The position numbers were made by a program, and so were the translations under genes. A DNA stretch of 64,000 nucleotides, taken from the sequence record MK250021.1. The stretch is one strand, 5' to 3'. Below the pieces are notes generated by a model. The model saw nothing but the letters and a program-made list of their open reading frames with translations. It was not told where the DNA came from and ran no database searches. This document shows, one piece after another, positions 16,081 through 60,698 of the stretch (position 1 is the first letter of the stretch; the number at the start of each line of letters is the position of its first letter).

Positions 16081-16081
16081 C

Positions 16082-24965: not shown

Positions 24966-24967
24966 AA

Positions 24968-26431: not shown

Positions 26432-26462
26432 TAAATATAAAATAACTATTTATTGTATTTAT

Positions 26463-28057: not shown

Positions 28058-28066
28058 TTTAATTAT

Positions 28067-30229: not shown

Positions 30230-30259
30230 AAATAAATAATTAAAATACATTTATTTTTA

Positions 30260-31774: not shown

Positions 31775-31785
31775 TTTAATAAATT

Positions 31786-32379: not shown

Positions 32380-32466
32380 TATAAATAAAAGTCTTCATAT
32401 TAGTTTATGAAGACTTTTTCTTTTTTATGACTATATAAATGTTAATTAACTATAATTTAATAATAG

Positions 32467-34294: not shown

Positions 34295-34302
34295 ATTAAT
34301 AT

Positions 34303-34485
34303 ATGAAAGTAATAATTAAGAATTATGATTCTACAAAAGCAAATGATATTGTAATTCCTGTTGAAAATAATATGGATAAACATGTAGACTTTTCTAGCGG
34401 TTATGTAGTATTATCAGATGGAAATAATGTTAAGAAAGTTTATATTGATTTTAACAAATATCCTGAAGTAGAATTAGATTTATAA
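34303..34485 (+). CDS. hypothetical protein
   Basis: 60-aa ORF between module genes. Confidence 0.5.
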   Translation: MKVIIKNYDSTKANDIVIPVENNMDKHVDFSSGYVVLSDGNNVKKVYIDFNKYPEVELDL

Positions 34486-34506
34486 TATATAAAAATATTT
34501 TAAAGT

Positions 34507-35574: not shown

Positions 35575-35677
35575 GAATTATTTTATCATTCATTTCATTA
35601 ATTATATTTTTTATTTAATCTTAGTGAACTATATGGATTTATTTCTATAGTTCACTTTTTATTTAATATTTTATGTG

Positions 35678-35685
35678 TATCTTTG
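35678..35685 (+). promoter_or_regulatory. Bacteroidota-type -7 element TATCTTTG
   Basis: Upstream of ATG 35723. Confidence 0.7.
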
Positions 35686-35722
35686 TATTGTAAATTATTT
35701 AACTAATTAAAATAGAAAAATT

Positions 35723-36064
35723 ATGTTAAAGGTCGTAGATACATCATATTATATAATTAATAATAAAGAAAAGAAAGAATTCTTTATATATTATGATATA
35801 AACCATAAAATAGATTGTAATATGTCATTATGGGATATTATGTTTGATTTAAATATTGAAAATGTAAATGAAGATAATAAAGATTTTCTTTTACAAGAAT
35901 TCTTTAAAAAGAATTGGACACGATTCTTTATGATTAAATCTATTCCTTATGATACTATGGTAAATGTATTACCATGGGATAGTATTTTAAATATGGTAAA
36001 TCAAATTGCGCAAACAATAGTTAAATATGAAGATTTAAAAGCTATTCCATCAAACAATAAGTAG
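35723..36064 (+). CDS. hypothetical protein (ends at TAG, or at TAA 36076 if read through)
   Basis: 113-aa ORF. Confidence 0.65.
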   Translation: MLKVVDTSYYIINNKEKKEFFIYYDINHKIDCNMSLWDIMFDLNIENVNEDNKDFLLQEFFKKNWTRFFMIKSIPYDTMVNVLPWDSILNMVNQIAQTIVKYEDLKAIPSNNK

Positions 36065-36133
36065 TTTTTAAAATAAAAGAATAATAGAAATAAACAAATT
36101 AATTTAATAACTTTAATAAAAGATTAAAAAATT

Positions 36134-37717
36134 ATGGCAAATGTAGTTTTGCGACCTTGGGTAAAGGTTGTAGGAGTTATTGCGGTAGTTGCCGCTATTA
36201 TGTTTGGTGCATCGAAATTCTTCGGTGGTAATAGTGATGATAAGTCATCTTCTAATAGTGGAGGATTGTTCAGTAACATTTTCTCTGGTAGTGATGATAA
36301 CGTTATTACTATTGGTACAAATACATATGCAGGATTCCTTCCATTTATGTATTTGAATAATGGTCTTAATCCTAATGAGGATTGCCCTATTTACAAGGAA
36401 TATGGTATTAAGTTGAAGATTGTCGTACAAGATGATTTTGCTGCAGGTCGAGCCGCATTTAAGAACGGCGATATTGATATTATTTATTGTACTGCAGATG
36501 CTCTTCCTGTTGAAATGAGCGAAGGTTCTGATATGAATGATACAAAATTCTTCAATATTTCTAACTGGTCACGAGGTGCTGATGCCATTGTAGTTAATAA
36601 AGGAATTCAGAATGTAAGCGGACTTATTGGTAAGGTTGTTTGTTGTTCACAGGGTACAGCATCTCATACACTTTTGTTGAATACACTTGAGACAAATGGT
36701 ATTGGAACAGATAAAGTAAACATGAGTAATTCTGTTGATCCAAATAAGGTTAATGTGAAGGTTGTAGATAGTGGCTTGGATGCAGCAAGTGCATTCCGTG
36801 CAGGTTCATGTGATGCAGCAGTTGTATTCTCTCCAGATGATCAGGATTTGGTTGCAACTGTGAAGGGAGCGCATGTATTGATTTCTACAACACAAGCATC
36901 AAATATTATTTGTGATGGTTTGATTGCAAAGCAGAGTTATCTTGATTCTAATAAGGAAAATATAAAGAAACTTATTTCTGCATTGTTGTGGGCAAATAAT
37001 CTTATGAATACTGATAGTAAAGCTGTAGCAACAGCAGCAAAGGCATTTGCAACTGCATATAATACAGATGAGAATTTCGCTATTAATGGTTCAAAGAATA
37101 TTCATTATGTCACATTGGGTGATGCTCAGAATTTCTTTGGGTTGAATAGCTCATATACAGGTGTAAAGGGAGATGAATTGTATTCAAAGATGGCTCGTAC
37201 ATATGAGTCTCTTGGACTTTGTAAGCATCCACTTGCATGGAGGAAAGTATCTTATTCTGATATTATTGAGAGTATTGCATCTGAGCCTGATAAGGTAAAG
37301 GGCGATCAGTCTGCAGAAGCAGGTCCAAAGTTTAATGAAACATCTATATCAGATGCAGAAACGAAGACAGCAATTTCAGACAAGAAGGTAACTATTGAAT
37401 ATGGTGTAAATAGTGATATTCTTGATAACGCAGCACAGAGTATTATTGATAAGGAATTTGCTGGTATTGCAAAACAGTTTGCAGGTTCAAAGATTCGAAT
37501 TATTGGTAATACAGATAATACAGGTAATTATGCATATAATGTAGATTTGTCTCGTAGACGTGCACAGTCTGTTGCTAATTATCTTGTAAAAGAATATGGA
37601 TTTGATAAGAATCGTTTCATTATTATTGGTAATGGTCCAAAGCGTGCTGTTACAGATGGTGTAGTAGGAGATAATAAGTCATATCGTTCTACTGATTTTC
37701 AGTTGATTTCAGAGTAA
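36134..37717 (+). CDS. ABC substrate-binding protein (NitT/TauT/NMT1-like) fused to a C-terminal OmpA-like peptidoglycan-binding domain
   Basis: N-terminal TM anchor; T.D.L...S.GADAIVV...L.GK.V....GT.SH.LL; C-terminal IIGNTDNTG..YNVDLSRRRAQSVANYL...G.G. Confidence 0.88.
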   Translation: MANVVLRPWVKVVGVIAVVAAIMFGASKFFGGNSDDKSSSNSGGLFSNIFSGSDDNVITIGTNTYAGFLPFMYLNNGLNPNEDCPIYKEYGIKLKIVVQDDFAAGRAAFKNGDIDIIYCTADALPVEMSEGSDMNDTKFFNISNWSRGADAIVVNKGIQNVSGLIGKVVCCSQGTASHTLLLNTLETNGIGTDKVNMSNSVDPNKVNVKVVDSGLDAASAFRAGSCDAAVVFSPDDQDLVATVKGAHVLISTTQASNIICDGLIAKQSYLDSNKENIKKLISALLWANNLMNTDSKAVATAAKAFATAYNTDENFAINGSKNIHYVTLGDAQNFFGLNSSYTGVKGDELYSKMARTYESLGLCKHPLAWRKVSYSDIIESIASEPDKVKGDQSAEAGPKFNETSISDAETKTAISDKKVTIEYGVNSDILDNAAQSIIDKEFAGIAKQFAGSKIRIIGNTDNTGNYAYNVDLSRRRAQSVANYLVKEYGFDKNRFIIIGNGPKRAVTDGVVGDNKSYRSTDFQLISE

Positions 37718-37735
37718 TTAAAATAAATTATAAAC

Positions 37736-37785
37736 ATGCGGTTTATAGAAAATAATTTTTATTAAATTCTATAAACCGCATTTTT
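37736..37785 (+). terminator. intrinsic terminator
   Basis: ATGCGGTTTATAGAA/TTCTATAAACCGCAT followed by a T-run. Confidence 0.75.
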
Positions 37786-37789
37786 AATT

Positions 37790-38287
37790 ATGAAATATAA
37801 GCATGAATTAATAGGTAATAAAGTATTAATTATATGTGATTGTGATGGTATAAGTATTCATCGAATATATTGTGCATATATATTGGGTGAAGTTATTGAT
37901 TATAATCCTATTACAAATGAAATAAGTATTAGGATAATTAATAATGATATGAATTACTATAGAATGTACAAATTATTTTATAGTAAATTAGGAACACGTA
38001 CATATTTTGAATTTAAACTTAATACATATGATCCTTTTGATCATAAATACTGTTCAGATAATCGTTTAGGATATATAGATCCAAGGGACTATAATGATTT
38101 ATGGTGGTATGAAGCATATTCAGGTAATGAAGCAATATCATTATTAAAAAATAACCTATTAGAAACAAAAGATAAACCTGTATATAATTATTGTTATCTA
38201 TCTACTGATTGTTATGGTAGTTTTAAATCTAAAAAAGAATATTTAACATATCTTTTAAATGAATTAAGTAATGAAAATACAGAATGA
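37790..38287 (+). CDS. paralog family X member 1
   Basis: MKYKHELIGNKVLIIC...YCAYILGEVIDYNP...DPF...KKEYL..LL.EL. Confidence 0.75.
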   Translation: MKYKHELIGNKVLIICDCDGISIHRIYCAYILGEVIDYNPITNEISIRIINNDMNYYRMYKLFYSKLGTRTYFEFKLNTYDPFDHKYCSDNRLGYIDPRDYNDLWWYEAYSGNEAISLLKNNLLETKDKPVYNYCYLSTDCYGSFKSKKEYLTYLLNELSNENTE

Positions 38288-38711
38288 TTTAATAGGTAAA
38301 AAAGTACTAATTATTCATACATATGTTAGTAAATTCTTTAGGAGTTATTGTACATACCATATAGCAACAATTAAATATTATTATCCATCAGGTAATTTTA
38401 TTATTGTAGAATGTCCGAATATTAATCGCACAAGATTTACATTAATAGATCATGATGATCCATTTATAAATAAAGATTATTCAGATAAAAAATTGGCAAT
38501 GAATTTTTCAACTAATGATGGATGGTATTATGTATTTACAAATAAATCTTCAATCAGACAATTAGAATATAATTTAATACATTATAAAAATAAACGTTCA
38601 TTCAATAGCTGTAGAATGATAGTTTCTACGGGACGTTTAATGACAACAAAAGAACGGAAAAACTGTTTTGAAACATTATTAAGTAAAATACAAGATGAAA
38701 TATCGAAATGA
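38271..38711 (+). CDS. paralog family X member 2
   Basis: MKIQNDLIGKKVLIIH...YC.Y.I..I..Y.P...DDPF. Confidence 0.75.
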   Translation: MKIQNDLIGKKVLIIHTYVSKFFRSYCTYHIATIKYYYPSGNFIIVECPNINRTRFTLIDHDDPFINKDYSDKKLAMNFSTNDGWYYVFTNKSSIRQLEYNLIHYKNKRSFNSCRMIVSTGRLMTTKERKNCFETLLSKIQDEISK

Positions 38712-39153
38712 CTTAATAGATAAGAAAGTATTAATTATATGTAATAGTTCTGGTCCTAACAACTGGAATCATTATTGTAGTTATGTTGTTGGGAAAGTAA
38801 TAAGTTATAATCCATCTATTAATTCTATAATGATTGAATATGGTGATAAAACACGAAACTATTTTTCTTTAATTGATTATAATGATCCATTTAAGAAACA
38901 TAATGATAGTTATAATAGAGGACTATATAAACGATTAGCATATAAAATACCATTGAATAGATATTCAGAAAGTTGGTGGTATGATGTCTTTTCATTACAA
39001 TCTGCAGAAAAATTATTAAATCATAATATTAAACATTCACGAGAAAAATATGTATATGGTGAATGTATATTATCAAAAGTATGTTATAATCATATAAGTA
39101 AAAAGAATTTTTTTGAATTATTATTAAAAGAATTAAAAGATGAATCTAATTAA
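38695..39153 (+). CDS. paralog family X member 3
   Basis: MKYRNDLIDKKVLIIC...YCSYVVGKVISYNP...DPF...KK.F..LLKEL. Confidence 0.75.
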   Translation: MKYRNDLIDKKVLIICNSSGPNNWNHYCSYVVGKVISYNPSINSIMIEYGDKTRNYFSLIDYNDPFKKHNDSYNRGLYKRLAYKIPLNRYSESWWYDVFSLQSAEKLLNHNIKHSREKYVYGECILSKVCYNHISKKNFFELLLKELKDESN

Positions 39154-39973
39154 ACGTTTATTTAAATTTGGAGGAACTTCTGATTTTGGTACGTTAACAA
39201 ATGTAATTATTAGTATCATAGGTGCTGTTATTATCATTATGGGATGGCATTTCATTTCTGCATATGATATTGTATCTAGTAATATTCTTCCAGATCCATT
39301 TAAGGTAATTGGTAGTATTCCTACACTTATTACTGAAAATCATTTGTTTGCAAATATTTGGTATACAGTTAAACTAAATCTTTCATGTTATGTATATGCA
39401 ATTTTACTATCATTTCCAATAGGATTTTTTATAGCATTATATCCTATTAATAATATACTATTTGGAAAATATATTAATTCTGTAAGATTTATTCCATTGC
39501 CTTCTATTACAGGAATTTTCTTAGCAATATTTGGACTTACATTTGGAATGAAAGTATGGTTTCTTACTGTTGCAATTATGATTTACATTATTCCTTCTGT
39601 TGTTAATAAGGTAAATGATTTACAAAATCCTGCTAATGAAAAAGATAATGTATATCTTCAGACCGCACAAACAATGGGTATGTCTGCATGGCAGAAGTTC
39701 AGATATGTATATTTCCCTTATGTAACAGGTGGTGTAGTTGATTCTTGTATTGATTTGCTTGCAATTAGTTATAGTTATGTAGTTATTGCAGAAATGATTT
39801 ATAAGGATGGAACTATAAGTGGTATGGGTGCATTGATTAATACGATGGTAAGACAATCACAAATGTCTTCCGCATATGCATTGTTATTCTTAATTATTAT
39901 TATTGGTTGCGTACAGGATTTCTTGTTTAAGAAAGGTGCAAGACTATTATTTCCTTACAAATATAAAAATTAA
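39140..39973 (+). CDS. ABC transporter permease (NitT/TauT/SsuC-like)
   Basis: ILP.P..V, multiple TM helices, A.TMG.S.WQ.F..V.FP EAA-type loop, .SYVVIAEM. Confidence 0.9.
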   Translation: MNLIKRLFKFGGTSDFGTLTNVIISIIGAVIIIMGWHFISAYDIVSSNILPDPFKVIGSIPTLITENHLFANIWYTVKLNLSCYVYAILLSFPIGFFIALYPINNILFGKYINSVRFIPLPSITGIFLAIFGLTFGMKVWFLTVAIMIYIIPSVVNKVNDLQNPANEKDNVYLQTAQTMGMSAWQKFRYVYFPYVTGGVVDSCIDLLAISYSYVVIAEMIYKDGTISGMGALINTMVRQSQMSSAYALLFLIIIIGCVQDFLFKKGARLLFPYKYKN

Positions 39974-39981
39974 TAAAGATT

Positions 39982-40971
39982 ATGAGTGATTTTAAAACAT
40001 TATTTGGACAAAATAATCAAGAGGATAAGAAAACACCTATCCTGTTAGAACAAGAAAAAAATATTAATTCATCTACAAATGATTCCAGTATTCCTGATGT
40101 AAGTAATAATGTAGATAAGCCAAATACACCAGATGTAAGTTTACCTAATAATCAGAAAAAAGATCGGGGTGATGGTAAAATAGATGTTGTTAATTTTAAA
40201 AATTTAACACAAATATTTAATAAAGGTAAGAAAAATGAATATAAATTATTTGAAAATTTCTCTTTGAATATAAATGATATTCCGAATGATTTTCAATCCG
40301 TGAGTATTATGGGCACATCTGGCTGTGGAAAAAGCAGATTAGTACGTCTTTTATGTGGATTGGATGACGTTCAATCTGGAAGTGTTTCTGTATATGGTAA
40401 ATCATTATCAGAATTTGGTAATATTCCTATGGTATTTCAAAATCATAGTAATAGTAATTATCCTTGGATGAAAATTATAGATAATGTAATGTTACCAATG
40501 ATTATTAGAGGATTTTCTAAAAAAGATGCGTATGAGAAAGCATTACAATTGATTAAGTTAGTTGGACTTGAAGGAAAAGAAAACGATTATCCAAATATGC
40601 TAAGTGGCGGACAAAATCAACGTATAGCAATTAGTAAATGTCTTGCTTCGAATTCTCAAATTATTGTATTAGATGAAGCAACTGGCGCATTAGATATAAA
40701 AATGAAAAAAGAGATTCAAAATATTATTTTAAAAATATTATATGATTCAAACGTAGATCCTACTATTATTAATATTACTCATAGTATTGAAGAGGCTCTA
40801 TATATAAGTAATAAAATTTTTATATTAAAAGCTAACCCTTGCGGTATTGTTAAAGTTATGAATATTCATTATCCAAATGAAGAAAATATGCACCGAGATG
40901 AATGGATTTTTCAAACAGAAGAGTATAAAAAATATTATTTAGAATTATCAAAAACATTATCTAATATTTAA
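39982..40971 (+). CDS. ABC transporter ATP-binding protein (NitT/TauT-like)
   Basis: GTSGCGKS Walker A, MVFQ Q-loop, LSGGQ signature, IVLDEA Walker B, ITHS H-loop. Confidence 0.95.
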   Translation: MSDFKTLFGQNNQEDKKTPILLEQEKNINSSTNDSSIPDVSNNVDKPNTPDVSLPNNQKKDRGDGKIDVVNFKNLTQIFNKGKKNEYKLFENFSLNINDIPNDFQSVSIMGTSGCGKSRLVRLLCGLDDVQSGSVSVYGKSLSEFGNIPMVFQNHSNSNYPWMKIIDNVMLPMIIRGFSKKDAYEKALQLIKLVGLEGKENDYPNMLSGGQNQRIAISKCLASNSQIIVLDEATGALDIKMKKEIQNIILKILYDSNVDPTIINITHSIEEALYISNKIFILKANPCGIVKVMNIHYPNEENMHRDEWIFQTEEYKKYYLELSKTLSNI

Positions 40972-41101
40972 ATAGATAAATATAATGGATTCATAATTAT
41001 TTATGAATTTATATTTTGCAAAGTTGAGCATATTACTAAATTTAGTAATATGCTCTTTTATTTTATAGATAAATATAATGCAAAATATAAATTAAATAAT
41101 T

Positions 41102-42067
41102 ATGAGAAATATTACACATGATGAATTTATCACATGTGCTAGATCTATACACGGTGATAAATATGATTATTCATAGACAAAGTTTATTAATAAATCTACG
41201 TTAATTAAAGTATCTGATAATATACATGGTATTTTTGAAATTCTTCCATTTAAACATTTATTATACGATGGATATAATAAAAATTATTTAAATAGTTATG
41301 CGAATGAATACAAAAAACATTTTATAGAAGTATGTAAATTAGTTCATAATAATAAATATGATTATTCAAAAACAGTATATATACATTCATAAACAAAAAT
41401 GTTAATAACATGTCCTATACATGGTGATTTTTATCAATTACCAATGTCACATATACATGGTAAAGGTTGTAGTAAATGTGGTGATTTATCTACAGCTTAT
41501 AAACAAGCATATACAACTGAAGAATTTATTAATAAATCAAAATAGATACATGGTAATAAATATGATTATTCTAATGTACATTATATAAGTAACAAATATA
41601 AGGTTATTATAGGATGTCCTATACATGGTAATTTTTTATAGTCTCCTGATAAACATTTAAATGGTCATGGTTGTCCAAAATGTGTTTTATATAAATTAGA
41701 AAATACAATATCATTATTACTTGATAACAATAATATTAAATATAATAAAAATTATAAAGAATTTAAATGGTTAATAAATGATATTAATCATTCATTAGAA
41801 TTAGATTTCTATATACCTGAATATAATATTGCTATAGAATGTTAGGGTAAATAGCATTTTGAACCAGTTGAAAAATTTGGAGGAAATGAAGCATATTAAA
41901 TATAGGTTAAAAATGATTAGATAAAATAGACATTATGTAAATAGCATAATATAAAATTATGTTATTTTTGTGACAAATATAACTATATAAATAATTATAA
42001 ATTAGGATATTTAACATATAAAACAGAAAATTTATTAGAATATATACGATTTCATTTATTAGTTTAA
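41102..42067 (+). pseudogene. degenerate homing endonuclease (KYDYS...CPIHG repeats plus nuclease domain); TAG=Gln, with two in-frame TAA stops
   Basis: Three HGxKYDYS-type repeats, CP.HG, G.GC.KC, LDFYIPEYNIAIEC(Q)GK(Q)HF; in-frame TAA at 41390 and 41897. Confidence 0.8.
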
Positions 42068-42072
42068 TATAC

Positions 42073-42420
42073 ATTTCAATAGCCCGTTCACTTGCATGTG
42101 ATTCAAAATTACTTATGTTAGATGAATATTCGTCAGGTCTTGATTATTTCACTAAATTTGAATTACAAGATCTTCTATTAAGTATTTTTAATAATAGAGA
42201 TGTAGATAGAACATTCTTGATAGTTACTCATAATATTTCAGAGGCTGTATATCTTTCAAATCGTATTTATATATTGGAACCAAATCCATGTAGAATCAAG
42301 GATGTAATTGATATTAAATTCAGTCAACCAAGAACACAAGCTATTCGTGAAACAGATGAATTTAAAAATTATCAAGCTAAAGTTCTTAAAGCATTAAATG
42401 AAACAATTAATAATAAGTAA
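42073..42420 (+). pseudogene. C-terminal half of a second ABC ATPase (Walker A and signature missing)
   Basis: ISIARSLACDSKLLMLDEYSSGLD...IVTHNISEAVYLSNRI; in-frame TAA upstream at 42019; no N-terminal half seen. Confidence 0.75.
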
Positions 42421-42431
42421 TTTTAAAAATT

Positions 42432-42767
42432 ATGACAAAACATATTATAACATTTGGTGATCTTAATTCTGGAGATCATATTTTTAGATATAGAATTGTT
42501 AAAGACAAAGCTAAATTAGAAACATTAGTAGTACAAGATATTAAAATTACAAATGATAAAGCTATAATAATTATAAAAGATTCATCCATAATTTATACTT
42601 TTGATAAAGAACGAACATATATTATGGGCGGTAATAATGATGATTGGAGTAGTTCTGTCATTGTCTCCGATTATGAATTAGTGGAATTCATTAAAACTGT
42701 TATTAATATAACAAAACAACCACTTATAAGACAACATGTTAATTTAATAAATTTTATATCAGATTGA
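42432..42767 (+). CDS. hypothetical protein
   Basis: 111-aa ORF followed by a hairpin at 42774-42812. Confidence 0.65.
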   Translation: MTKHIITFGDLNSGDHIFRYRIVKDKAKLETLVVQDIKITNDKAIIIIKDSSIIYTFDKERTYIMGGNNDDWSSSVIVSDYELVEFIKTVINITKQPLIRQHVNLINFISD

Positions 42768-42825
42768 AATATAAAAAGGTGAGATAATATACTAAACTAT
42801 CTCACCTTTTTTCTTTATATATAAT

Positions 42826-43278
42826 ATGAAAATATTAAATGATATAGTTAATAAAAAAGTATTAATAATATATAAATGTAATGGTCCTGCTGGATGGCAT
42901 AGAGATTATTGTGGTTATAAAATTGGGAAAATAGTAGAATATAATATTGAAAATAATACTATTAATATTGAAGATAAAAAGAAAAATATAAAAACATATA
43001 AAATTATAGATAAAAAAGATCCATTTAATTTAAATTTAATACAAAATAATGATAATAGATTCGCATATTATCATATTTCAAAATATAGGCAAATACGTGA
43101 ATGGGAAAATGTTTTTATATATAATGATGCATTAACTATTTTAAAAAATAGTATTAAACAATCACATTCACAATATGTATATAAACTATTTTGTTTATCT
43201 TCATTTTCATATGGTAAAAAAACAAAGAAAAGGTTTTTAAGAGATTTATTAAAGGAATTAGAAGAAAATTATCAATAA
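42826..43278 (+). CDS. paralog family X member 4
   Basis: MKILNDIVNKKVLIIY...YCGYKIGKIVEYN...DPF...KK.FL..LLKEL. Confidence 0.75.
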   Translation: MKILNDIVNKKVLIIYKCNGPAGWHRDYCGYKIGKIVEYNIENNTINIEDKKKNIKTYKIIDKKDPFNLNLIQNNDNRFAYYHISKYRQIREWENVFIYNDALTILKNSIKQSHSQYVYKLFCLSSFSYGKKTKKRFLRDLLKELEENYQ

Positions 43279-43303
43279 TATTTTTTGTTTAAAATAAAAT
43301 GTG

Positions 43304-43311
43304 TATCTTTG
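43304..43311 (+). promoter_or_regulatory. Bacteroidota-type -7 element TATCTTTG
   Basis: Upstream of ATG 43353; downstream AACAATTAAAAATATAA is shared with the 11683 and 45931 sites. Confidence 0.7.
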
Positions 43312-43352
43312 TATTGTTAATAAAATAATGAACAATTAAAAATATAAACAAT

Positions 43353-43679
43353 ATGAAAGCAAATTTTGTAACGGTTATCAAGAAGAGAGCAATCAAGAAT
43401 GTACCAGCATTTCAAGATTTCTCAATGAAACAGATTAAGGTTATTAGTAATTCACCTAATTATCCAAATTCTGTAACTTTATCTATGGACATTTATTGTG
43501 ATAATGTTGATGGTTATATTTTTAATAATGCATCTACAAATGAACAATATGCATTGACATCTGTTCAACTTAGTGACGCATTACGTAAGATGATTAGTAA
43601 TAAAAAGTGTTATAAGCCTAACAGTAAGGAAGATTTACTTAGACTTACATTTGATACTATTGAATCTTTTAAATTTTAA
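43353..43679 (+). CDS. hypothetical early protein
   Basis: 108-aa ORF. Confidence 0.7.
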   Translation: MKANFVTVIKKRAIKNVPAFQDFSMKQIKVISNSPNYPNSVTLSMDIYCDNVDGYIFNNASTNEQYALTSVQLSDALRKMISNKKCYKPNSKEDLLRLTFDTIESFKF

Positions 43680-43691
43680 TTAATTTAAATG

Positions 43692-43720
43692 TAGACAATA
43701 ATACATTATTAATATATAAT
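43692..43720 (+). promoter_or_regulatory. sigma70-like promoter TAGACA-N17-TATAAT upstream of the tRNA
   Basis: Exact 17-nt spacer; second copy TAGACA-N17-TATAAA at 43780-43808. Confidence 0.65.
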
Positions 43721-43928
43721 ATATATAAATTATTTGATTAAACAAATTAATGAAAAATTAAAAATAATTTATTAAAATGTAGACAATATCAAATAAATAA
43801 CATATAAATAATATAATAATTAAAAACAAACGCTTATTTGATTTTCGTAGCGTTATGGATAAGTTGATAGAATTCAGAAATTCCTTTTAAGACGAATACA
43901 CATGGAATGGTCCATTGGTGGAATTGGT

Positions 43929-44237
43929 AAAGTGTTTGCCTGCATTAATTTGTAGAATCCATCAAATTCAGTATCAGTTAGGATTAAATTTTAAATATTA
44001 GTAGTTGCTATTGACGAAAATATTGACAATAATTAATTTATTGTTACCTGAGGAATAAGTGTTTATTTAATAAACAACGAAGAAGCTGACTAAGAAAACC
44101 TAAGGTCTTCATAAGAAGATAGCTTGGTAATACTGAGCCAAGATAATTTTTAATTATAAGGTGCAGAGACTATACGGTGGGAACTAATAGCAAGTTAAGA
44201 TATAGTCCAAACTTTATAGAAATATAAAGAGTTTTTG
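43929..44237 (+). ncRNA. group I intron 1 (309 nt) in the tRNA D-loop
   Basis: Exon ends in U, intron ends in G; P1 GGT|AAA pairs TTTGCC with U-G at the splice site; P10 GTGTTT pairs 3' exon AGACAC; P3 CCATC/GGTGG; P7 GACTA(44168)/TAGTC(44203); S element AAGATATAGTCC. Confidence 0.88.
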
Positions 44238-44252
44238 AGACACGAGGGACTT

Positions 44253-44600
44253 AAAAAATTTGAGTGCTCTATTGAGAAATCATAGAAGTAGAATCTCCCT
44301 AACGAAACGGAAGCCTAATTATTGGTGACAATAATGGTGGTGACGAACTCACTAAGTTGTTATAGAACGTTAATCTATATTAAATGTAAATTGAAGTGTT
44401 ACAGCATAAATAGCGAAGAGACTATAGAGGAGATACCTAAGTTAAAGTACACGAAGAATAATCAATTAGATTATCACTATATATGAAGAGTATATAGTTT
44501 TATAATAAGGAATGCGCATTACTTTAATATGGTAGTAAAATAGTCCAGACTACAACATCTTAATAATTAAGATGGCTTGTATTAAAGCAAGAGTAGTAAG
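44253..44600 (+). ncRNA. group I intron 2 (348 nt) in the anticodon (U^AA)
   Basis: P1 ACTT|AAA pairs TTTGAGT with U-G at the splice site; P3 ATCTCC(44293)/GGAGAT(44429); P7 GACTA(44420)/TAGTC(44541); terminal G 44600. Confidence 0.9.
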
Positions 44601-44656
44601 AAAATCCCTTGGGCAGAAATGCCCGTGCCGGTTCGAATCCGGCATGGACTACATAT

Positions 44657-44700
44657 AAAAGTCTGATAATCAATAGCTTAGATTATCAGACTTTTATTTT
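44657..44700 (+). terminator. intrinsic terminator after the tRNA
   Basis: AAAAGTCTGATAATC/GATTATCAGACTTTT 15-bp perfect stem followed by a T-run. Confidence 0.85.
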
Positions 44701-44736
44701 TATATAGTATATAAAGTATAATTAATATTTTTAATA

Positions 44737-45873
44737 ATGATTACAATTACAGAACAATATATAAAAGAGTACCAAAAGAAATTAGATGATATTTCTAAAT
44801 CATTTGATTTAGAGAAACAACATATTATAGTTGAAGAATTATCAATTAAAGTTTCTGCACCAGATTTTTGGGATGATTTTGAAAGTGCGACATCAATCAC
44901 AAAAGAACTTAATACAGCAAAAGAAAAGATAGATGATGTTGAACATATGAAAATGCTTATTGATGAGTTATCAACTGCATTAATGTATTATAAGGAATTT
45001 GAAGGTAAAGATGAAGAAGAATATATAAATCTAGCGAATTCTGAATTAATTAGTGAATTCAGTAAATTTGAGGATAAGTATAGATTTGTTGATCCTACAG
45101 ATTCATTAGGAGCTGTATTAGACATTAATGCAGGTGCAGGAGGAACAGAAGCAAATGATTGGGCAAATATGTTATTCCGTATGTATGAGATGTGGGCAAA
45201 ATCAAATAATTATAAGTTTAAAGTTTTATATTATTCAGAAGGGGATAAAGTAGGTATTAAAAATGTATCTATTGAAATTACTGGTAATAATGCGTATGGA
45301 ACATTAAAAGGTGAAACCGGTGTTCATAGAATGGTAAGGGTTTCACCATATAATGCACAAGGTAAACGTATGACTAGTTTTGCTGCAGTTTCTGTTGTGC
45401 CTTTAGTAGATAATTCTATCAAGGTTGAAATTGACGATTCTAAATTAACAATAGATACATTTAGATCTTCTGGTGCTGGTGGTCAAAATGTAAATAAGGT
45501 AGAATCTGGTGTACGTGTAAATTATATGTATACAGATCCAGATACAGGTGAAACAGAAAAAATTCAAGTTGCAAATACAGAAACAAGAGATCAACCAAAG
45601 AATAAAGAAAGAGCAATGCAAATTCTTAAATCTATTCTTTATAAGAAAGCATTGGATAAACAATTAGCTAAGAAAAAAGAAATAGAAGATGCAAAACTTA
45701 AAAATGAATGGGGTGCACAAATTAGATCTTATGTATTTGATGATAAGCGAGTAAAAGATCATCGTACAGGTTATCAAACAACTGATGTTGATTCTGTTAT
45801 GAATGGAAATATAAATGGTTTTATAGAATCATATAATAATTGGATTATTGAGCAAGAAAATAATAGACTTTAA
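44737..45873 (+). CDS. prfB: peptide chain release factor 2
   Basis: P.FWDD, GAGGTEANDWA.ML.RMY, GE.GVHRMVRVSPY...R.TSFA (SPF/SPY specificity motif), SGAGGQNVNKVES, WG.QIRSYV; single continuous ORF with no TAG. Confidence 0.96.
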   Translation: MITITEQYIKEYQKKLDDISKSFDLEKQHIIVEELSIKVSAPDFWDDFESATSITKELNTAKEKIDDVEHMKMLIDELSTALMYYKEFEGKDEEEYINLANSELISEFSKFEDKYRFVDPTDSLGAVLDINAGAGGTEANDWANMLFRMYEMWAKSNNYKFKVLYYSEGDKVGIKNVSIEITGNNAYGTLKGETGVHRMVRVSPYNAQGKRMTSFAAVSVVPLVDNSIKVEIDDSKLTIDTFRSSGAGGQNVNKVESGVRVNYMYTDPDTGETEKIQVANTETRDQPKNKERAMQILKSILYKKALDKQLAKKKEIEDAKLKNEWGAQIRSYVFDDKRVKDHRTGYQTTDVDSVMNGNINGFIESYNNWIIEQENNRL

Positions 45874-45930
45874 TTAAATATTTTCTTATAAATAATTAAT
45901 GAAATATTTTCCTATATAAAATAAATTATG

Positions 45931-45938
45931 TATCTTTG
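45931..45938 (+). promoter_or_regulatory. Bacteroidota-type -7 element TATCTTTG
   Basis: Upstream of ATG 45986. Confidence 0.7.
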
Positions 45939-45985
45939 TATTGTTGATAATTAAATTAGTATAAACAATTAAAAATATAAAGGTT

Positions 45986-46207
45986 ATGAAAGTACGTATA
46001 GGAAGAGACGAAAAGTTCATTGAACTTGGTAAGTATGACGATATAACAATTATAGATGATGCTGGTACAGAGTATCGCATTGAAGCAAATGATCCTTGTT
46101 ATCAAGGTAATGGTATAAAAGTTTATGATATTGATGGGTGCATTCTTGTAAAACCATCTACATCAAATCTTGTACAAATTTTCTCGACATCAAAGATTGA
46201 GTTGTAA
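45986..46207 (+). CDS. hypothetical early protein
   Basis: 73-aa ORF. Confidence 0.65.
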   Translation: MKVRIGRDEKFIELGKYDDITIIDDAGTEYRIEANDPCYQGNGIKVYDIDGCILVKPSTSNLVQIFSTSKIEL

Positions 46208-46262
46208 TATCTATAATTGTTTTATATGTTAATATGAAAATTTTAACTATAAAATATATTAT

Positions 46263-46790
46263 ATGGGTTGTCACACATGGGTTTATAAGCTAATCAGTTC
46301 GATGTCTAAAGATGAAATAAACAGAGAAATTGATTGTGTTATTAACGAACGTAAACAGCGTTTTTACATGTCTTCTAATGAGGATGAATATGCAAATAGA
46401 ATGGTAAAACTTACTAAAGATAGTTCTGTTGCACCAATGTCTTATGCAGATGCTATTAAACGTTATAAAGAAGCAAGAGAAGAAACACAACTTATTATAG
46501 ATAAGTTAACACTTGCTAAGCAAACAGGTGATTTATCTGTAATAACATATAAAAATGGATTTGATACATCAGAAGATGATACATATCTTTTCTTATGTAC
46601 AAATACCCCATTTAGATGTTATGAATATACAGATAAACAATTTACAAATAAAGATGAATTGATTTCATATATACATTCAGTTGATCCAAAAAAAATTGAA
46701 GTTTATAATAATGATAAATCATTAGATGAACAGATATATGATTTCTTTAAACTTCATGGTGACAATAATTTATTATTTGAATTCGGTTAA
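46263..46790 (+). CDS. hypothetical protein
   Basis: MGCHTW start, 175 aa. Confidence 0.7.
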   Translation: MGCHTWVYKLISSMSKDEINREIDCVINERKQRFYMSSNEDEYANRMVKLTKDSSVAPMSYADAIKRYKEAREETQLIIDKLTLAKQTGDLSVITYKNGFDTSEDDTYLFLCTNTPFRCYEYTDKQFTNKDELISYIHSVDPKKIEVYNNDKSLDEQIYDFFKLHGDNNLLFEFG

Positions 46791-46792
46791 AA

Positions 46793-47257
46793 ATGAGAAC
46801 AAATAAGTTAAATGAATGTGTACTATCAATGATGTATACAAACATGGATTTAGAAATTGATTCTTATTCATTGTTATGTTGTTTAGATGAAATTGGATTT
46901 ACATATCCGCCCTATCCTAATTCAACTGAATATTTGAATATTGGTGAATCACGGAACCTTAGAGAATTTAATGAAACTAATAAACATGTATTCTATCACA
47001 TGATTTATGATTTTATTAAATGGACATATGGAATATCTGTAAGTTTCTGGGAATCTAAATCAATATCATATAATGAAAGAGGAACAATTGAAAAAGTTGA
47101 TATTGAAGGTATGGATGAAACATCAGATATATATGGTATTATTACAAATATGGTATTTGATGATTTAAATACTGCATATAAAACTGTTGCACATATGATT
47201 GTTTCCGATTTAAATTGGAGACATAAACAAAAGAAAAAATTTTCTAATGTTAAATAA
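46793..47257 (+). CDS. hypothetical protein
   Basis: 154-aa ORF. Confidence 0.65.
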   Translation: MRTNKLNECVLSMMYTNMDLEIDSYSLLCCLDEIGFTYPPYPNSTEYLNIGESRNLREFNETNKHVFYHMIYDFIKWTYGISVSFWESKSISYNERGTIEKVDIEGMDETSDIYGIITNMVFDDLNTAYKTVAHMIVSDLNWRHKQKKKFSNVK

Positions 47258-47318
47258 GACTTTTTTAATAAACAAATATATACATAATAATTAATAATAT
47301 TTTAAATTCTATTTAAAC

Positions 47319-47858
47319 ATGGGATTGTTTGATTTTCTTAATAAGAATAAGTCAGAGGATGTAAGTACATTGTTTACTGACGAAAATAAAGGAAGTTGTG
47401 CTTCTGCAGCTGATGCATATAAGAAGTCTCGTTATGGAATTCTTAAGACTGATAAAATGATGCTTGAGGAATTTTTCACGGATGTTAAGCTTCTTGTAGA
47501 GCAGAAAAATATGGAGCGAAGCTATTGTGGAATGGTTCAAATCGGGGATGATATTATTAAGTACCTTCCTAAGATTAAGGATCGTCTTGGACGTCAGCTC
47601 GGTTATAAAGTAATTGTGTTGGATGATAATACAGTTATTACTAATAATGTATCAAATACAAAAGATATAATTAAGAGTGGACATACGTATCTCCTTCTTA
47701 TTTGGGATAAGTTGTCTGTAGAGGAAGTTGCAGAATATAATGCTACACATCCAGTAAATGATGATTCAGATGATACATCAACTGTTGATTCATTGAAGCA
47801 AGATGAAGATACAAAGAAAGTTGAAACATCTGATACTTCAAAGAAAAACACAAAGTAG
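47319..47858 (+). CDS. hypothetical protein (ends at TAG, or at TAA 47879 if read through)
   Basis: 179-aa ORF. Confidence 0.7.
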   Translation: MGLFDFLNKNKSEDVSTLFTDENKGSCASAADAYKKSRYGILKTDKMMLEEFFTDVKLLVEQKNMERSYCGMVQIGDDIIKYLPKIKDRLGRQLGYKVIVLDDNTVITNNVSNTKDIIKSGHTYLLLIWDKLSVEEVAEYNATHPVNDDSDDTSTVDSLKQDEDTKKVETSDTSKKNTK

Positions 47859-47890
47859 AAGAAACTTAATAAAAAATAATTATCAATTTG

Positions 47891-47919
47891 TAGACAATTT
47901 GTTTATTAAGTAATATAAA
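47891..47919 (+). promoter_or_regulatory. promoter TAGACA-N17-TATAAA upstream of the structured non-coding region
   Basis: Same motif and spacing as 43692 and 43780. Confidence 0.6.
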
Positions 47920-47929
47920 TATTAAGATA

Positions 47930-48155
47930 GAGAAAAAGGTGATAGTAATTATACATTTGATGCTTTTATAATTAACCATTTAATTTGTGTATAATTACTT
48001 TTCTTGTAAATATTTGGTTCGGTTAATTAACGAATATTTACAAACAAAGAAGAGAGAAGTAAAATGTTTTAGAAGAGAAACATTTTACAAATGGAAAAGG
48101 AAAGATAGATATGAGGTGAAAAGTCGTTGTGATAACGGTTTTTCACCATTTTTAT
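47930..48155 (+). ncRNA. putative structured ncRNA (four consecutive hairpins)
   Basis: Perfect stems 47944-55/47988-99, 48004-14/48033-43, 48059-69/48078-88, 48115-22/48140-47 (last followed by a T-run); no ORF. Confidence 0.5.
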
Positions 48156-48189
48156 TTTTATAATATTTTCATAATTTAAAAATTATATG

Positions 48190-48197
48190 TATCTTTG
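48190..48197 (+). promoter_or_regulatory. Bacteroidota-type -7 element TATCTTTG
   Basis: Upstream of ATG 48227. Confidence 0.7.
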
Positions 48198-48226
48198 TAT
48201 TATAATAATTTAAATATAGAACTATT

Positions 48227-49819
48227 ATGAAATATTTGGTTAATTGGATTGAAAAAGAAATGCATCCAGATCAGCATATAAGTTCTAAGTCAACATCTTC
48301 AGAATATTTTTACTTCTATGGTAAAAAGGTTCGACTATCTGATCACTTAAATGGTGAACATAAAGATAATGATTTGGAAATTATATGTGTGCATGATTTA
48401 TTCGGTAAGAATAAACAATACATTGTAAAAGAGGGTTCATCTCCTTCTATCATGTCTGTTCCTGATGTAAAGACTTTAAAAATAGTATTATCTACATTTT
48501 TATTTCAATATAAAAATAGTTATGATAATATACGAATAAAAAATGCTATTACAGAAAGTACGCAAAAAAGTAATTTTGATGTATGCATTGATAAACTCAA
48601 AAATTGTGGAATTCTAAATTCTTCTGATATTGGTTCTATTAACGTATATATGAATACTATTTGTAAACAATGGGGAAGTATGAAAGAAGATCTTCGATTA
48701 ACAATATTACATCTGTTTAATTCTGGTAAAACTATCGAGGAAATAAAAAATATCATTAATGTTGAATTTCCGGTTAATAATGCAAATAATTGGCAAAATG
48801 AAGATATTCAAGATAATATAAACAAGATATATCAATATATTCCATATGATTATAAAATAGATGAGCATATCATTTGTCAAAAATCATTATTAAAGAAAAA
48901 AGTAGAAGATAGTTATAAGAATCTTCTTGTTGAATATGAAAATTATAGACAGCAAACAATAGAGAAATTGTGTCAGCAAGATAAAGACAGATATGTTAAT
49001 ATCTTTGGTTCATTACTTGTAAAAAATACAGATGGACGTTATTCTAAGTTATCTATAGCACAGAGAAAGAAATTTAGAGAACTTGCATACAACAAAGTCC
49101 CTTATGATATATGTCTTAACGTATTTAATCATACATTTAAGATAAAGAAAAATAAAAGATTCTTACCAGAACCTACAGAGCTTGGTAATGTGGTAAATAA
49201 ATTTTTAAAACTATACAACATTGGTATTGTAAAATATCCAGACGAAGAAGATTTTGATAATATATATTCTTCTAACTTTGAAACTAATATTACTACTGTA
49301 GAAAGTAATAATGTAGACGAAGTAGAAAGTAATAATGTAGATGAAGTAGAAACTAATGATAATAATGTTAATGTAGAAGAGATAATCAATCATGATAATG
49401 ATATAATTCATTTTATTCATGATACTGATAAAGTTATAAAGGAATCTTATGAATATGCAAATGCAGAATTTTTGAATATTATTGATATTCATGAAATGTT
49501 TGATAATAATCAGATTAATATTCTTGATGAAGTAATTAAGAAGATTAATGATACAGATAAGTATACATCATTTGAAACTCGTCGTATCACTGATGTATTT
49601 GCAAAGCATTATTCTGATATATGGGATAAGTTAACATGGGGTCAAAAAGGACTTTGTTCAACTATTATTACGGAAGAACGAATGAATCTTAATGAAACAG
49701 ATTTTATTATCAATAAGATATTTGATAAAACATCATTTAATTGGCCTGTAACAGAGCAATGTCGCAAGGATATTAAAATGTATTGTCAACGTATAAAAGA
49801 GAGCCGTATGGCTGCTTAA
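48227..49819 (+). CDS. large early hypothetical protein (N-terminal S.Y......VRLSDH motif; short VESNNVDE tandem repeat at 49298-49345)
   Basis: 530-aa ORF, no TAG. Confidence 0.75.
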   Translation: MKYLVNWIEKEMHPDQHISSKSTSSEYFYFYGKKVRLSDHLNGEHKDNDLEIICVHDLFGKNKQYIVKEGSSPSIMSVPDVKTLKIVLSTFLFQYKNSYDNIRIKNAITESTQKSNFDVCIDKLKNCGILNSSDIGSINVYMNTICKQWGSMKEDLRLTILHLFNSGKTIEEIKNIINVEFPVNNANNWQNEDIQDNINKIYQYIPYDYKIDEHIICQKSLLKKKVEDSYKNLLVEYENYRQQTIEKLCQQDKDRYVNIFGSLLVKNTDGRYSKLSIAQRKKFRELAYNKVPYDICLNVFNHTFKIKKNKRFLPEPTELGNVVNKFLKLYNIGIVKYPDEEDFDNIYSSNFETNITTVESNNVDEVESNNVDEVETNDNNVNVEEIINHDNDIIHFIHDTDKVIKESYEYANAEFLNIIDIHEMFDNNQINILDEVIKKINDTDKYTSFETRRITDVFAKHYSDIWDKLTWGQKGLCSTIITEERMNLNETDFIINKIFDKTSFNWPVTEQCRKDIKMYCQRIKESRMAA

Positions 49820-53970: not shown

Positions 53971-53985
53971 AATTTAAATATCATT

Positions 53986-57233: not shown

Positions 57234-57329
57234 AATAATCCTATTTAATATTCTATTTTAATTATTTATTTTGATAATTTGATATATTGCGAAATAAATA
57301 ATAAAACCAATATTTTTATTAATACGGAT

Positions 57330-59951: not shown

Positions 59952-59956
59952 TTAAA

Positions 59957-60691: not shown

Positions 60692-60698
60692 TTGAAAT

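What the first reader, a model, noticed from the sequence alone, without database searches (positions are those of the whole stretch)
44737..45873. Phage RF2 that has lost the autoregulatory +1 frameshift, next to the intron-split tRNA
Bacterial prfB, including Bacteroidota, typically has CTT-TGA-C near codon 20-26 and needs a +1 frameshift. Here the equivalent region reads in frame as TCA TTT GAT (S-F-D, 44800-44808), so RF2 is made without feedback. RF2 terminates at TAA/TGA but not TAG, which is what a TAG-recoded phage needs while RF1 is outcompeted or suppressed. The gene has no TAG and has its own CAGACT-N17-TATAAA promoter overlapping the tRNA terminator, consistent with expression before the code switch. 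tRNA plus RF2 would then form a compact translation-takeover cassette (inference).
Basis: partly seen in the sequence, partly recalled or inferred. Interest (0 to 1): 0.72.

Follow-up and report, generated by a model that had tools for sequence, protein, structure and literature searches.

The report
Known Lak megaphage release factor 2
This is the already published release-factor-2 gene of a Lak megaphage of Prevotella; it has no programmed frameshift, but neither do most of its host family's own RF2 genes, so the missing frameshift is ordinary and not a phage invention.

Summary
The window comes from a baboon-type Lak megaphage: its RF2 is 100% identical to Prevotella phage Lak-B1 and relatives. 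ORF 44737-45873 (+) is an intact RF2. It scores 403 bits on TIGR00020 (cut-off 370), has GGQ and an SPY decoding motif, and shows dN/dS of about 0.08 between Lak lineages. It lies in a block free of in-frame TAG, flanked by heavily TAG-recoded late-gene blocks. In detail: codons 22-24 (TCA TTT GAT, 44800-44808) replace the CTT-TGA-C slip site.

The nearest bacterial relative (52% identity) is a protein NCBI names RF2 of "Prevotella sp.", and it is encoded as one uninterrupted ORF. In an even sample of the host family, 104 of 133 prfB genes lack the frameshift. A tree places Lak RF2 inside Bacteroidales, but on an unresolved backbone where both states are mixed.

RF2 in Lak phages was published in 2019. 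The proposed promoter is not supported.

The neighbouring tRNA is not a suppressor. It is a tRNA-Leu(UAA) split by two introns, one of them in the D-loop. That is the more interesting side result.

The parts
44737..45873 (+). Lak megaphage release factor 2 gene (378 codons plus TAA), one uninterrupted frame with no in-frame TAG
   Evidence: 100% identical to Lak-B1/B2/B3/B5/B6/B9 and 92% to Lak-A/C. dN/dS 0.08 versus Lak-A/C.
44800..44808 (+). Codons 22-24 (TCA TTT GAT = S-F-D), the position homologous to the CTT-TGA-C +1 slip site of frameshifted prfB. No stop and no upstream AGGAGG-like element.
   Evidence: Matches to frameshifted genes start at residue 23. SFD is conserved in Lak-A, B and C.
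45343..45351 (+). SPY tripeptide (residues 203-205) in place of the canonical RF2 SPF decoding motif. The same variant is common in Bacteroidales host RF2.
   Evidence: alignment A2; SPY in L018-L022 and many host-family loci.
45478..45486 (+). GGQ peptidyl-tRNA hydrolysis motif (residues 248-250)
   Evidence: invariant columns G248 G249 Q250 in A2.
45529..45552 (+). 8-residue insertion (YTDPDTGE) after the GGQ region, shared with the Prevotella sp. RF2 (P0121/P0332) and P0122 and with the other huge-phage RF2s (L007; L008/L009 hold an insertion of the same length there), and absent from the other RF2s aligned
   Evidence: A2, pairwise alignment with P0332, translations of L007-L009.
44657..44701 (+). 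14-bp hairpin (44657-44670 pairs with 44682-44695, 11-nt loop) followed by a T-run. Terminator-like, directly after the tRNA and 36 nt before the RF2 start codon. The stem is kept in Lak-C through a compensatory change.
   Evidence: sequence; alignment A1 with L006. Not listed by the scan, whose loop limit is 8.
44687..44715 (+). Present, but only 3 of 6 in the first hexamer and not distinguishable from AT-rich background.
43909..43928 (+). tRNA-Leu(UAA) exon 1 (acceptor 5' strand, D-stem 5' strand, D-loop up to ...AATTGGT)
   Evidence: acceptor stem co-varies completely between Lak-B and Lak-C.
43929..44237 (+). Intron 1 (309 nt) in the D-loop. It has a group I core, follows a T and ends in G.
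   Evidence: Rfam RF00028 at 44055-44229, 40.5 bits (gathering 50), E 9.8e-9, full model length. Removing it restores a canonical D-arm.
44238..44252 (+). tRNA-Leu(UAA) 15-nt middle exon (end of D-loop, D-stem 3' strand, anticodon stem 5' strand, C32 U33 U34)
44253..44600 (+). Intron 2 (348 nt) after U34 of the anticodon. It follows a T, ends in G and has a CTT/GAG P1-like pairing. Group I-like, but not recognised by the Rfam model.
   Evidence: RNA-library contigs match from about 44255 onward and then run on into unlike sequence.
44601..44652 (+). tRNA-Leu(UAA) exon 3 (A35 A36, anticodon stem 3' strand, long variable arm, T-arm, acceptor 3' strand)
   Evidence: the variable-arm stem co-varies between Lak-B and Lak-C.
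31783..49819 (+). Block of + strand ORFs nearly free of in-frame TAG (standard-code compatible) that contains RF2. It is flanked by TAG-recoded blocks at 17603-31774 and 49873-64000.
   Evidence: up to 23 in-frame TAG per ORF in the flanking blocks.

Best explanation
The ORF is the release factor 2 that all Lak megaphages are already known to carry. It is a class-I release factor of Bacteroidales ancestry, most similar (52% identity) to the chromosomal RF2 that NCBI names as Prevotella sp., the host genus. It shares that lineage's peculiarities: the SPY/SPF decoding motif, KRMTSF instead of RRHTSF, and an 8-residue insertion after GGQ. It is intact and under strong purifying selection.

It is readable with the standard code, because it has no TAG and lies in a TAG-free block. 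It can therefore be made before or without UAG suppression.

Inferred function, as already proposed in the literature: it supplies RF2 activity for UAA/UGA termination of phage genes while UAG is read as glutamine by phage suppressor tRNAs encoded elsewhere. In the window's long ORFs the stops are 36 TAA and 10 TGA. The phage encodes no RF1.

The uninterrupted frame is real but not a phage-specific innovation. Most prfB genes of the host family, including the Prevotella-type gene nearest to it, also lack the programmed +1 frameshift. The phage gene most likely never had it after capture. At the least, lacking it does not set the phage apart from its host.

Shown: identity, intactness, absence of the slip site, its absence in host-type genes, Bacteroidales ancestry, purifying selection. 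Inferred: codon specificity, timing of expression, role in the code switch.
For: Identity: 100% to Lak-B and 92% to Lak-A/C records. TIGR00020 scores 403 bits against a cut-off of 370 while the RF1 models stay below theirs. PCRF and RF-1 domains are present.

Known already: PMC6784885 states that all complete megaphage genomes encode RF2. PMC8346664 and the recoding preprint repeat it.

Recoding context: dense in-frame TAG in 17603-31774 and 49873-64000, none in RF2.

Ancestry: the best genome matches are all Bacteroidota. The clade of Bacteroidales plus phage sequences has 100/100 support. The insertion and motif variants are shared with the Prevotella sp. RF2.

Host state: P0332, named 'peptide chain release factor 2 [Prevotella sp.]', is 374 aa and occurs on 795 contigs. 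It is a single table-11 ORF between an AMP-binding ligase gene and efp, reading CAC CGG TAC TTG AAC ATC at the site. Phocaeicola massiliensis, Prevotellamassilia timonensis and two Bacteroidaceae MAGs each have one RF2, without a frameshift. In the even family sample, 104 genes run from residue 1 in one frame, 29 start at residue 18-22, and 3 are fragments. All 20 of the 29 that I fetched carry the slip motif (16 GAGGAGG, 2 GGGGAGG, 2 GAGGGGG; then TAT or TAC, then CTTTGAC).

Selection: dN/dS 0.08.

No RF1: in the complete Lak-C record only the RF2 locus matches prfA, at 219 bits, below the cut-off.
Against: The tree does not resolve which Bacteroidaceae lineage gave rise to the phage gene. 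The Lak branch is very long (about 4 changes per column to the nearest bacterium). It joins an open backbone (88/54) where frameshifted and unframeshifted genes are interspersed, with at least 6 changes of state. Capture of a frameshifted gene followed by loss in the phage is therefore not excluded.

'Prevotella' rests on NCBI's name for P0332/P0338 and on the titles of L018 and L019, not on a genus-wide tally.

A MAG titled 'Prevotella sp.' (L025) does have the frameshift, though it belongs to a different GTDB family in which 32 of 32 (genus) and all listed (family) genes are frameshifted.

Stop-codon specificity, expression timing and any effect on RF1 are untested.
Confidence: 0.75

Rival explanations
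1. Phage-specific loss. Lak, or an ancestral huge phage, captured a frameshift-bearing Bacteroidales prfB and then lost the slip site, so that RF2 is produced without feedback during infection.
For: The frameshift is ancestral in Bacteroidota: Flavobacteriales and other Bacteroidales families have it, as do 29 of 133 genes in the host family. The tree cannot place the phage branch among the family's lineages. Frameshift loss happened repeatedly in this family, so one more loss is plausible.
Against: The nearest named homologue and 78% of the host family already lack it. Every family member with at least 78% identity to the Prevotella sp. protein lacks it. All three other huge-phage RF2s in the clade also lack the slip motif. 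No relic of the AGGAGG element or the TGA is visible in Lak. Nothing distinguishes the phage from its host in this trait.
Confidence: 0.2
2. The phage RF2 has altered function, for example changed stop-codon specificity or a decoy or inhibitor role, rather than ordinary UAA/UGA termination.
For: Forty residues that are at least 95% conserved in Bacteroidales RF2 are changed in Lak, many of them in domain 1 (residues 54-129). SPY replaces SPF.
Against: GGQ, the SPx loop and KRMTSF match the host-type RF2 (identical in the SPY host genes; the Prevotella sp. protein has SPF). SPY is common in host genes. The protein passes the equivalog-level prfB cut-off. dN/dS of 0.08 shows constraint over the whole protein.
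Confidence: 0.04
3. Artefact: host DNA mis-binned or mis-assembled into the phage, or a decaying pseudogene.
For: None found.
Against: The gene is present at the same locus in the 15 Lak records matched and in several IMG/VR Lak contigs. It is only 52% identical to host RF2. It is intact and under purifying selection.
Confidence: 0.01

Closest known systems
RF2 of Lak megaphages (Devoto et al. 2019, PMC6784885; Crisci et al. 2021, PMC8346664; Borges et al. preprint 10.1101/2021.08.26.457843)
   Same: It is this gene: 100% identical to the Lak-B records, with the same proposed role alongside CUA suppressor tRNAs in a TAG-to-Gln recoded genome.
   Different: Nothing in the gene itself. Those papers do not mention the frameshift ('frameshift' occurs 0 times in each) or the gene's Bacteroidales/Prevotella-type ancestry.
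Chromosomal prfB of Prevotella and most Bacteroidaceae (no programmed frameshift)
   Same: Single uninterrupted ORF starting MIT..., SPY/SPF, KRMTSF, 8-residue insertion after GGQ, DD(K/R)RVKDHRTG near the C-terminus; 52% identity.
   Different: Lak RF2 is AT-rich. It has 40 changes at family-conserved sites, mostly in domain 1, and a very long branch. It sits in a phage genome next to a tRNA.
Classical autoregulated prfB (E. coli type: SD-like element, CTT TGA C, +1 frameshift; Prince et al. 2025, PMC12421855)
   Same: Orthologous protein family. The slip site aligns with Lak codons 22-24.
   Different: No in-frame TGA, no CTT, no AGGAGG/AGGGGG element, hence no frameshift-based feedback.
'Code change module' of TGA-recoded Jade phages (suppressor tRNA, TrpRS and RF1 upstream of the lysis cassette; Borges et al. 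preprint)
   Same: A phage-encoded release factor of the type that does not read the reassigned stop, written in standard code.
   Different: In Lak the adjacent tRNA is tRNA-Leu(UAA), not a suppressor. No synthetase or lysis genes were recognised among the neighbours.
Group I intron in tRNA-Leu(UAA) of cyanobacteria and plastids (own knowledge of the family)
   Same: Intron 2 sits after U34 of a tRNA-Leu(UAA) anticodon, follows U, ends in G and forms a CUU/GAG P1.
   Different: Intron 2 is not recognised by Rfam RF00028. The same tRNA gene has a second intron with a group I core in the D-loop, a position I know of no precedent for. Two literature searches returned no title on tRNA introns in Lak phages or on a D-loop group I intron; I read only the Jug-phage paper among those hits.

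Membership tests
Bacterial class-I release factor 2 (prfB, TIGR00020) | PCRF and RF-1 domains, with a score above the curated prfB cut-off and below the prfA cut-offs | tested here: met
   PCRF 2.6e-48, RF-1 1.7e-30. TIGR00020 403 bits versus 370; prfA models 236 and 215 bits versus 400 and 423.
Bacterial class-I release factor 2 (prfB, TIGR00020) | GGQ catalytic motif | tested here: met
   G248 G249 Q250 are invariant columns.
Bacterial class-I release factor 2 (prfB, TIGR00020) | SPF 'peptide anticodon' | tested here: inconclusive
   Lak has SPY. The same variant occurs in many Bacteroidales chromosomal RF2s that are the only RF2 of their genome, so it is presumably functional. Its specificity was not assayed.
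Bacterial class-I release factor 2 (prfB, TIGR00020) | Releases at UAA and UGA but not UAG | not testable with these tools
   Needs a biochemical assay.
Autoregulated prfB with programmed +1 frameshift | In-frame TGA near codon 20-26, preceded by CTT and followed by C | tested here: not met
   TCA TTT GAT at the homologous codons, and no stop anywhere in the ORF.
Autoregulated prfB with programmed +1 frameshift | Shine-Dalgarno-like AGGGGG/AGGAGG three bases upstream of the slip codon | tested here: not met
   Lak reads GAT ATT TCT AAA TCA, against CTG AGG AGG TAT CTT in frameshifted Bacteroidaceae.
Phage 'code-change' cassette (suppressor tRNA plus release factor) | The adjacent tRNA has an anticodon complementary to the reassigned stop (CUA) | tested here: not met
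   The spliced tRNA is Leu with anticodon UAA in both Lak-B and Lak-C. Lak-A has an intronless tRNA-Leu(TAA) at the same place. ARAGORN finds no other tRNA in the window.
tRNA-Leu (class II tRNA) | Cloverleaf with long variable arm, supported by covariation | tested here: met
   ARAGORN at default settings on the spliced sequences. Acceptor and variable-arm stems change in a compensatory way between Lak-B and Lak-C.
Group I intron (Rfam RF00028) | Conserved catalytic core (P3-P8) scored by the covariance model | tested here: inconclusive
   Intron 1: 40.5 bits over the full model, E 9.8e-9, but below the gathering score of 50. Intron 2: no match at E up to 10.
Group I intron (Rfam RF00028) | The 5' exon ends in U paired to G in P1, and the intron ends in G | tested here: met
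   Both junctions fit...GGT|AAAG...TTTG|AGAC and ...CTT|AAAA...TAAG|AAAA. The P1 pairing of intron 2 appears in the minimum-energy fold.
Group I intron (Rfam RF00028) | Splicing actually occurs | tested here: inconclusive
   No spliced joint was seen in contigs of four RNA libraries, but contigs of relatives cannot show rare or short spliced tRNAs.

The most novel reading that the evidence does not exclude
The huge-phage RF2 lineage (Lak plus the IMG/VR phages L007-L009) captured a frameshift-regulated Bacteroidales prfB and independently discarded the slip site. Together with its heavily remodelled domain 1, this gives a feedback-free, phage-tuned RF2 that takes over UAA/UGA termination while host RF1 is sidelined.
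Probability: 0.15. Interest if true: 0.4.

Novelty: already known. Interest (0 to 1): 0.2.

Why it matters
For the finding itself, little changes. A phage-encoded RF2 in TAG-recoded Lak phages has been in the literature since 2019, and its lack of a frameshift mirrors the host family, so it says nothing special about phage strategy.

Two by-products may be useful.

1. Programmed-frameshift autoregulation of prfB has been lost repeatedly and is a minority state in gut Bacteroidaceae, in about 22% of an even sample. This matters for anyone using the frameshift as a phylum-wide expectation.

2. The tRNA next to RF2 is a tRNA-Leu(UAA) interrupted twice, once in the D-loop by an intron with a group I core. 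tRNA finders miss it, so Lak tRNA inventories and intron counts are probably incomplete.

Tried and rejected
- ARAGORN with default settings and Rfam at gathering thresholds found no tRNA or intron in the window.
- ARAGORN with introns allowed gave 'tRNA-Leu(gag) with a 649-nt intron'. I rejected it: it needs a poor D-stem and a 26-nt variable region, and it violates the U-1/omega-G rule. The two-intron solution gives a perfect cloverleaf.
- A search of the window's own genome was not possible because none is held.
- My first host sample was centred on a MAG titled 'Prevotella sp.' (L025). That genome turned out to belong to a different family from Prevotellamassilia and Phocaeicola, so I did not take it as the host-family sample.
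- The quick tree suggested that Lak nests among unframeshifted genes. After I added 20 frameshifted family members, the careful tree dissolved that backbone, so I do not claim the donor's state from phylogeny.
- The promoter scan showed no enrichment.
- RNA-library contigs of Lak relatives cover the intron region and parts of RF2, but contigs cannot rank expression or show timing, and no splice joint was seen.
- Pfam gave nothing informative for the ORFs scanned on either side of RF2, apart from an ABC-type ATPase domain in 39967-40971 and a weak thioredoxin-like hit in 41393-41899.
- I ran no structure prediction or complex prediction, because no claim here depends on one.
- Masked N stretches (12489-27705 region) were left untouched.

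Full report
WHAT THE WINDOW IS. The 64-kb window has 26.1% G+C. The protein of ORF 44737-45873 is 100% identical to six Prevotella phage Lak-B records (MK250020 and others), 99.5% to three more, and 92% to Lak-A and Lak-C. The window therefore comes from a baboon-type Lak megaphage. Reading TAG through lengthens ORFs only in two blocks, 17603-31774 and 49873-64000, which hold up to 23 in-frame TAG per ORF. The + strand ORFs between 31783 and 49819, RF2 included, have almost none. This is the published Lak pattern: TAG is read as Gln, structural genes are recoded, and some regions are TAG-free (PMC6784885; PMC8346664).

THE OBSERVATION. ORF 44737-45873 (+, 378 aa) has no internal stop and no in-frame TAG. 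It has PCRF and RF-1 domains. It passes the curated prfB model (TIGR00020, 403 bits against a cut-off of 370), while the prfA models stay far below their cut-offs. GGQ is present and the decoding tripeptide is SPY. That they are the homologue of the slip site follows from two results. tblastn matches to frameshifted bacterial genes start at query residue 23. A codon-by-codon comparison puts Lak ...AAA TCA TTT GAT TTA... opposite ...AGG AGG TAT CTT TGA C... of frameshifted Bacteroidales genes.

IS THE MISSING FRAMESHIFT A PHAGE TRAIT?

- Nearest bacterial relatives. A scan of one genome per prokaryotic species returned only Bacteroidota among the 29 best relatives of Lak RF2. Among the top hits, Phocaeicola massiliensis, Prevotellamassilia timonensis and two Bacteroidaceae MAGs have a single open frame of 381-390 codons and no CTTTGA motif. 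A Muribaculaceae MAG, a Bacteroides sp. and a MAG titled Prevotella sp. (L025) carry (G/A)GGAGG-N3-CTTTGAC. Each of the four unframeshifted genomes has just one RF2 plus one RF1, so these are the organisms' working prfB genes.
- Nearest cluster representative. The nearest representative to Lak RF2 in a library of 1.8 billion protein clusters is P0121 (52% identity). Its close relatives include P0332 and P0338, which NCBI names 'peptide chain release factor 2 [Prevotella sp.]'. P0332 is 374 aa and is seen on 795 contigs. On four metagenome contigs, one from a Hadza gut sample, it is one table-11 ORF between an AMP-binding ligase gene and efp. It reads CAC CGG TAC TTG AAC ATC at the site.
- Family sample. 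Prevotella, Bacteroides and Phocaeicola all belong to Bacteroidaceae in GTDB (PMC12880540). An even sample of 141 genomes of the family that holds Prevotellamassilia and Phocaeicola gave 136 matches to P0332. Of these, 104 run from residue 1-2 in one frame, 29 begin at residue 18-22, and 3 are fragments. I fetched 20 of the 29, and all carry the slip motif (16 GAGGAGG, 2 GGGGAGG, 2 GAGGGGG; then TAT or TAC, then CTTTGAC), which validates the proxy. Every family member at least 78% identical to the Prevotella sp. protein lacks the frameshift.
- Contrast. The family of the MAG L025 is a different one, and there all genes seen are frameshifted.

The premise 'Bacteroidota typically have it' holds for the phylum at large but not for the host family.

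PHYLOGENY. A quick tree put the Lak clade inside a mostly unframeshifted Bacteroidaceae clade. After adding the 20 frameshifted family members, I built a careful tree (LG+C20, ultrafast bootstrap and SH-aLRT). It keeps Lak plus three other huge-phage RF2s inside Bacteroidales with 100/100 support. The family backbone is open (88/54), the two states are interspersed (at least 6 changes), and the Lak branch is very long. The ancestry is therefore shown. The state of the donor is not resolved by the tree. Inheritance of an unframeshifted gene is the simpler reading, because that is the majority state and the state of the nearest named Prevotella gene. I put it at roughly two to one or better against an independent loss. 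Either way, lacking the frameshift does not distinguish the phage from its host.

THE PROTEIN. Features that look odd against the general RF2 consensus are lineage traits shared with the Prevotella sp. RF2, not phage inventions. They are SPY/SPF, KRMTSF instead of RRHTSF, GGQN, an 8-residue insertion after the GGQ region, and DDKRVKDHRTG. SPY also recurs in many other host-family genes. Lak RF2 differs at 40 positions that are at least 95% conserved in 34 Bacteroidales RF2s, concentrated in domain 1, and none is in the decoding or catalytic motifs. dN/dS between Lak-B and Lak-A/C is 0.08, with dS about 0.7, so the gene is functional. The complete Lak-C record has no RF1. Only the RF2 locus matches prfA, and it does so below the cut-off. 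Long ORFs in the window end in TAA (36) or TGA (10) when TAG is read through. All of this fits the published, still untested, idea that the phage brings its own RF2 for UAA/UGA while UAG is suppressed.

EXPRESSION SIGNALS. Some Bacteroidales host genes show a TAnnTTTG element upstream of prfB; Lak does not. A 14-bp hairpin followed by a T-run (44657-44701) sits between the tRNA and RF2 and is kept by a compensatory change in Lak-C. That argues against simple co-transcription. Contigs from four RNA libraries of Lak relatives cover parts of RF2 and, more heavily, the tRNA-intron region. Contigs cannot give level, strand or timing.

THE NEIGHBOURING tRNA. It is real, but it is not a suppressor and does not have a single intron. 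Removing 43929-44237 (309 nt, in the D-loop) and 44253-44600 (348 nt, after U34) joins exons 43909-43928, 44238-44252 and 44601-44652 into a canonical tRNA-Leu(UAA), which ARAGORN accepts at default settings. The same operation on Lak-C also gives a tRNA-Leu(UAA), with fully compensatory acceptor-stem and variable-arm changes. Lak-A has an intronless tRNA-Leu(TAA) at the same place. Both 5' exon ends are T and both introns end in G. Intron 1 matches the Rfam group I model over its full length (40.5 bits, E 9.8e-9, below the gathering score of 50). Intron 2 occupies the classic tRNA-Leu(UAA) position and forms a CUU/GAG P1, but the model does not recognise it. Devoto et al. list one tRNA intron (in tRNA-Tyr) for the Lak-B genomes and do not mention group I introns or tRNA-Leu. 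This twice-split gene was therefore probably missed. Because the tRNA reads UUA/UUG, 'tRNA plus RF2 = takeover cassette' is not supported. None of the flanking ORFs scanned shows a recognisable translation function.

VERDICT. Observation confirmed; interpretation partly supported. The gene and its presumed role are already published. The 'lost frameshift' is a property shared with most of the host family. The finding is ordinary (interest 0.2). The split tRNA-Leu and the patchy loss of prfB autoregulation in Bacteroidaceae are recorded as side observations.

Noticed in passing
window 43909-44652 (+): tRNA-Leu(UAA) split by two introns: 309 nt in the D-loop (Rfam group I core, 40.5 bits) and 348 nt after U34. 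tRNA finders miss it or mis-parse it as Leu(gag) with one 649-nt intron. Lak-C has the same structure with compensatory stem changes, and Lak-A has an intronless copy. I know of no precedent for a group I intron in a tRNA D-loop, and the Lak papers do not describe it.
   Followed up: yes
L003:2183-2986 (+), Lak-A, between the intronless tRNA-Leu and RF2: Where Lak-B and Lak-C have the introns, Lak-A has a 267-codon ORF with 5 in-frame TAG and two C2H2/C2HC-type zinc fingers (Pfam PF22992, 3.7e-9). It may be a free-standing homing-endonuclease-like gene. The C-terminal part is unassigned.
   Followed up: partly
window 44255-44608: In four metatranscriptomic libraries, many contigs match only this stretch (intron 2), start at about 44255 and then run on into unrelated sequence. 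Contig depths there are far above those over RF2. The intron-2-like element seems to occur in several genomic contexts, so it may be mobile or repeated. It has no second copy within this window.
   Followed up: partly
host-family genomes: The programmed +1 frameshift of prfB is a minority state in the sampled family of Prevotellamassilia and Phocaeicola (29 of 133). It is interspersed with the unframeshifted state on the RF2 tree (at least 6 changes), which implies repeated losses. The neighbouring family sampled through L025 keeps it in every gene seen.
   Followed up: yes
L009: about 3019-3021 (same gene as L012): A related huge-phage RF2 (IMG/VR contig of 262 kb) has an in-frame TGA at codon ~17 of the gene, 29 codons upstream of the PxFW motif, where its 204-kb relative L008 has Arg (ELRK*FEYL against ELRKRFEYL). 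This could be a sequencing error, a pseudogene or a read-through site. There is no CTT-TGA-C context.
   Followed up: no
window 41393-41899 (+): A 168-codon ORF with 4 in-frame TAG lies inside the otherwise TAG-free block. It has weak thioredoxin-like and treble-clef zinc-finger hits, both below the Pfam cut-offs.
   Followed up: no
window 17603-31774 and 49873-64000: The boundaries between TAG-dense and TAG-free gene blocks are sharp. For example, ORF 30236-31774 has 11 in-frame TAG and the next ORF, 31783-32379, has none.
   Followed up: no
L007 (IMG/VR contig of 165 kb, 26% G+C): A phage far smaller than Lak, rated 100% complete by CheckV, carries the RF2 most closely related to Lak's (96/97 support, very long branch). 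It lacks the slip motif and has SPY. I did not determine whether it is TAG-recoded; the 7-kb locus shows no clear signal.
   Followed up: partly
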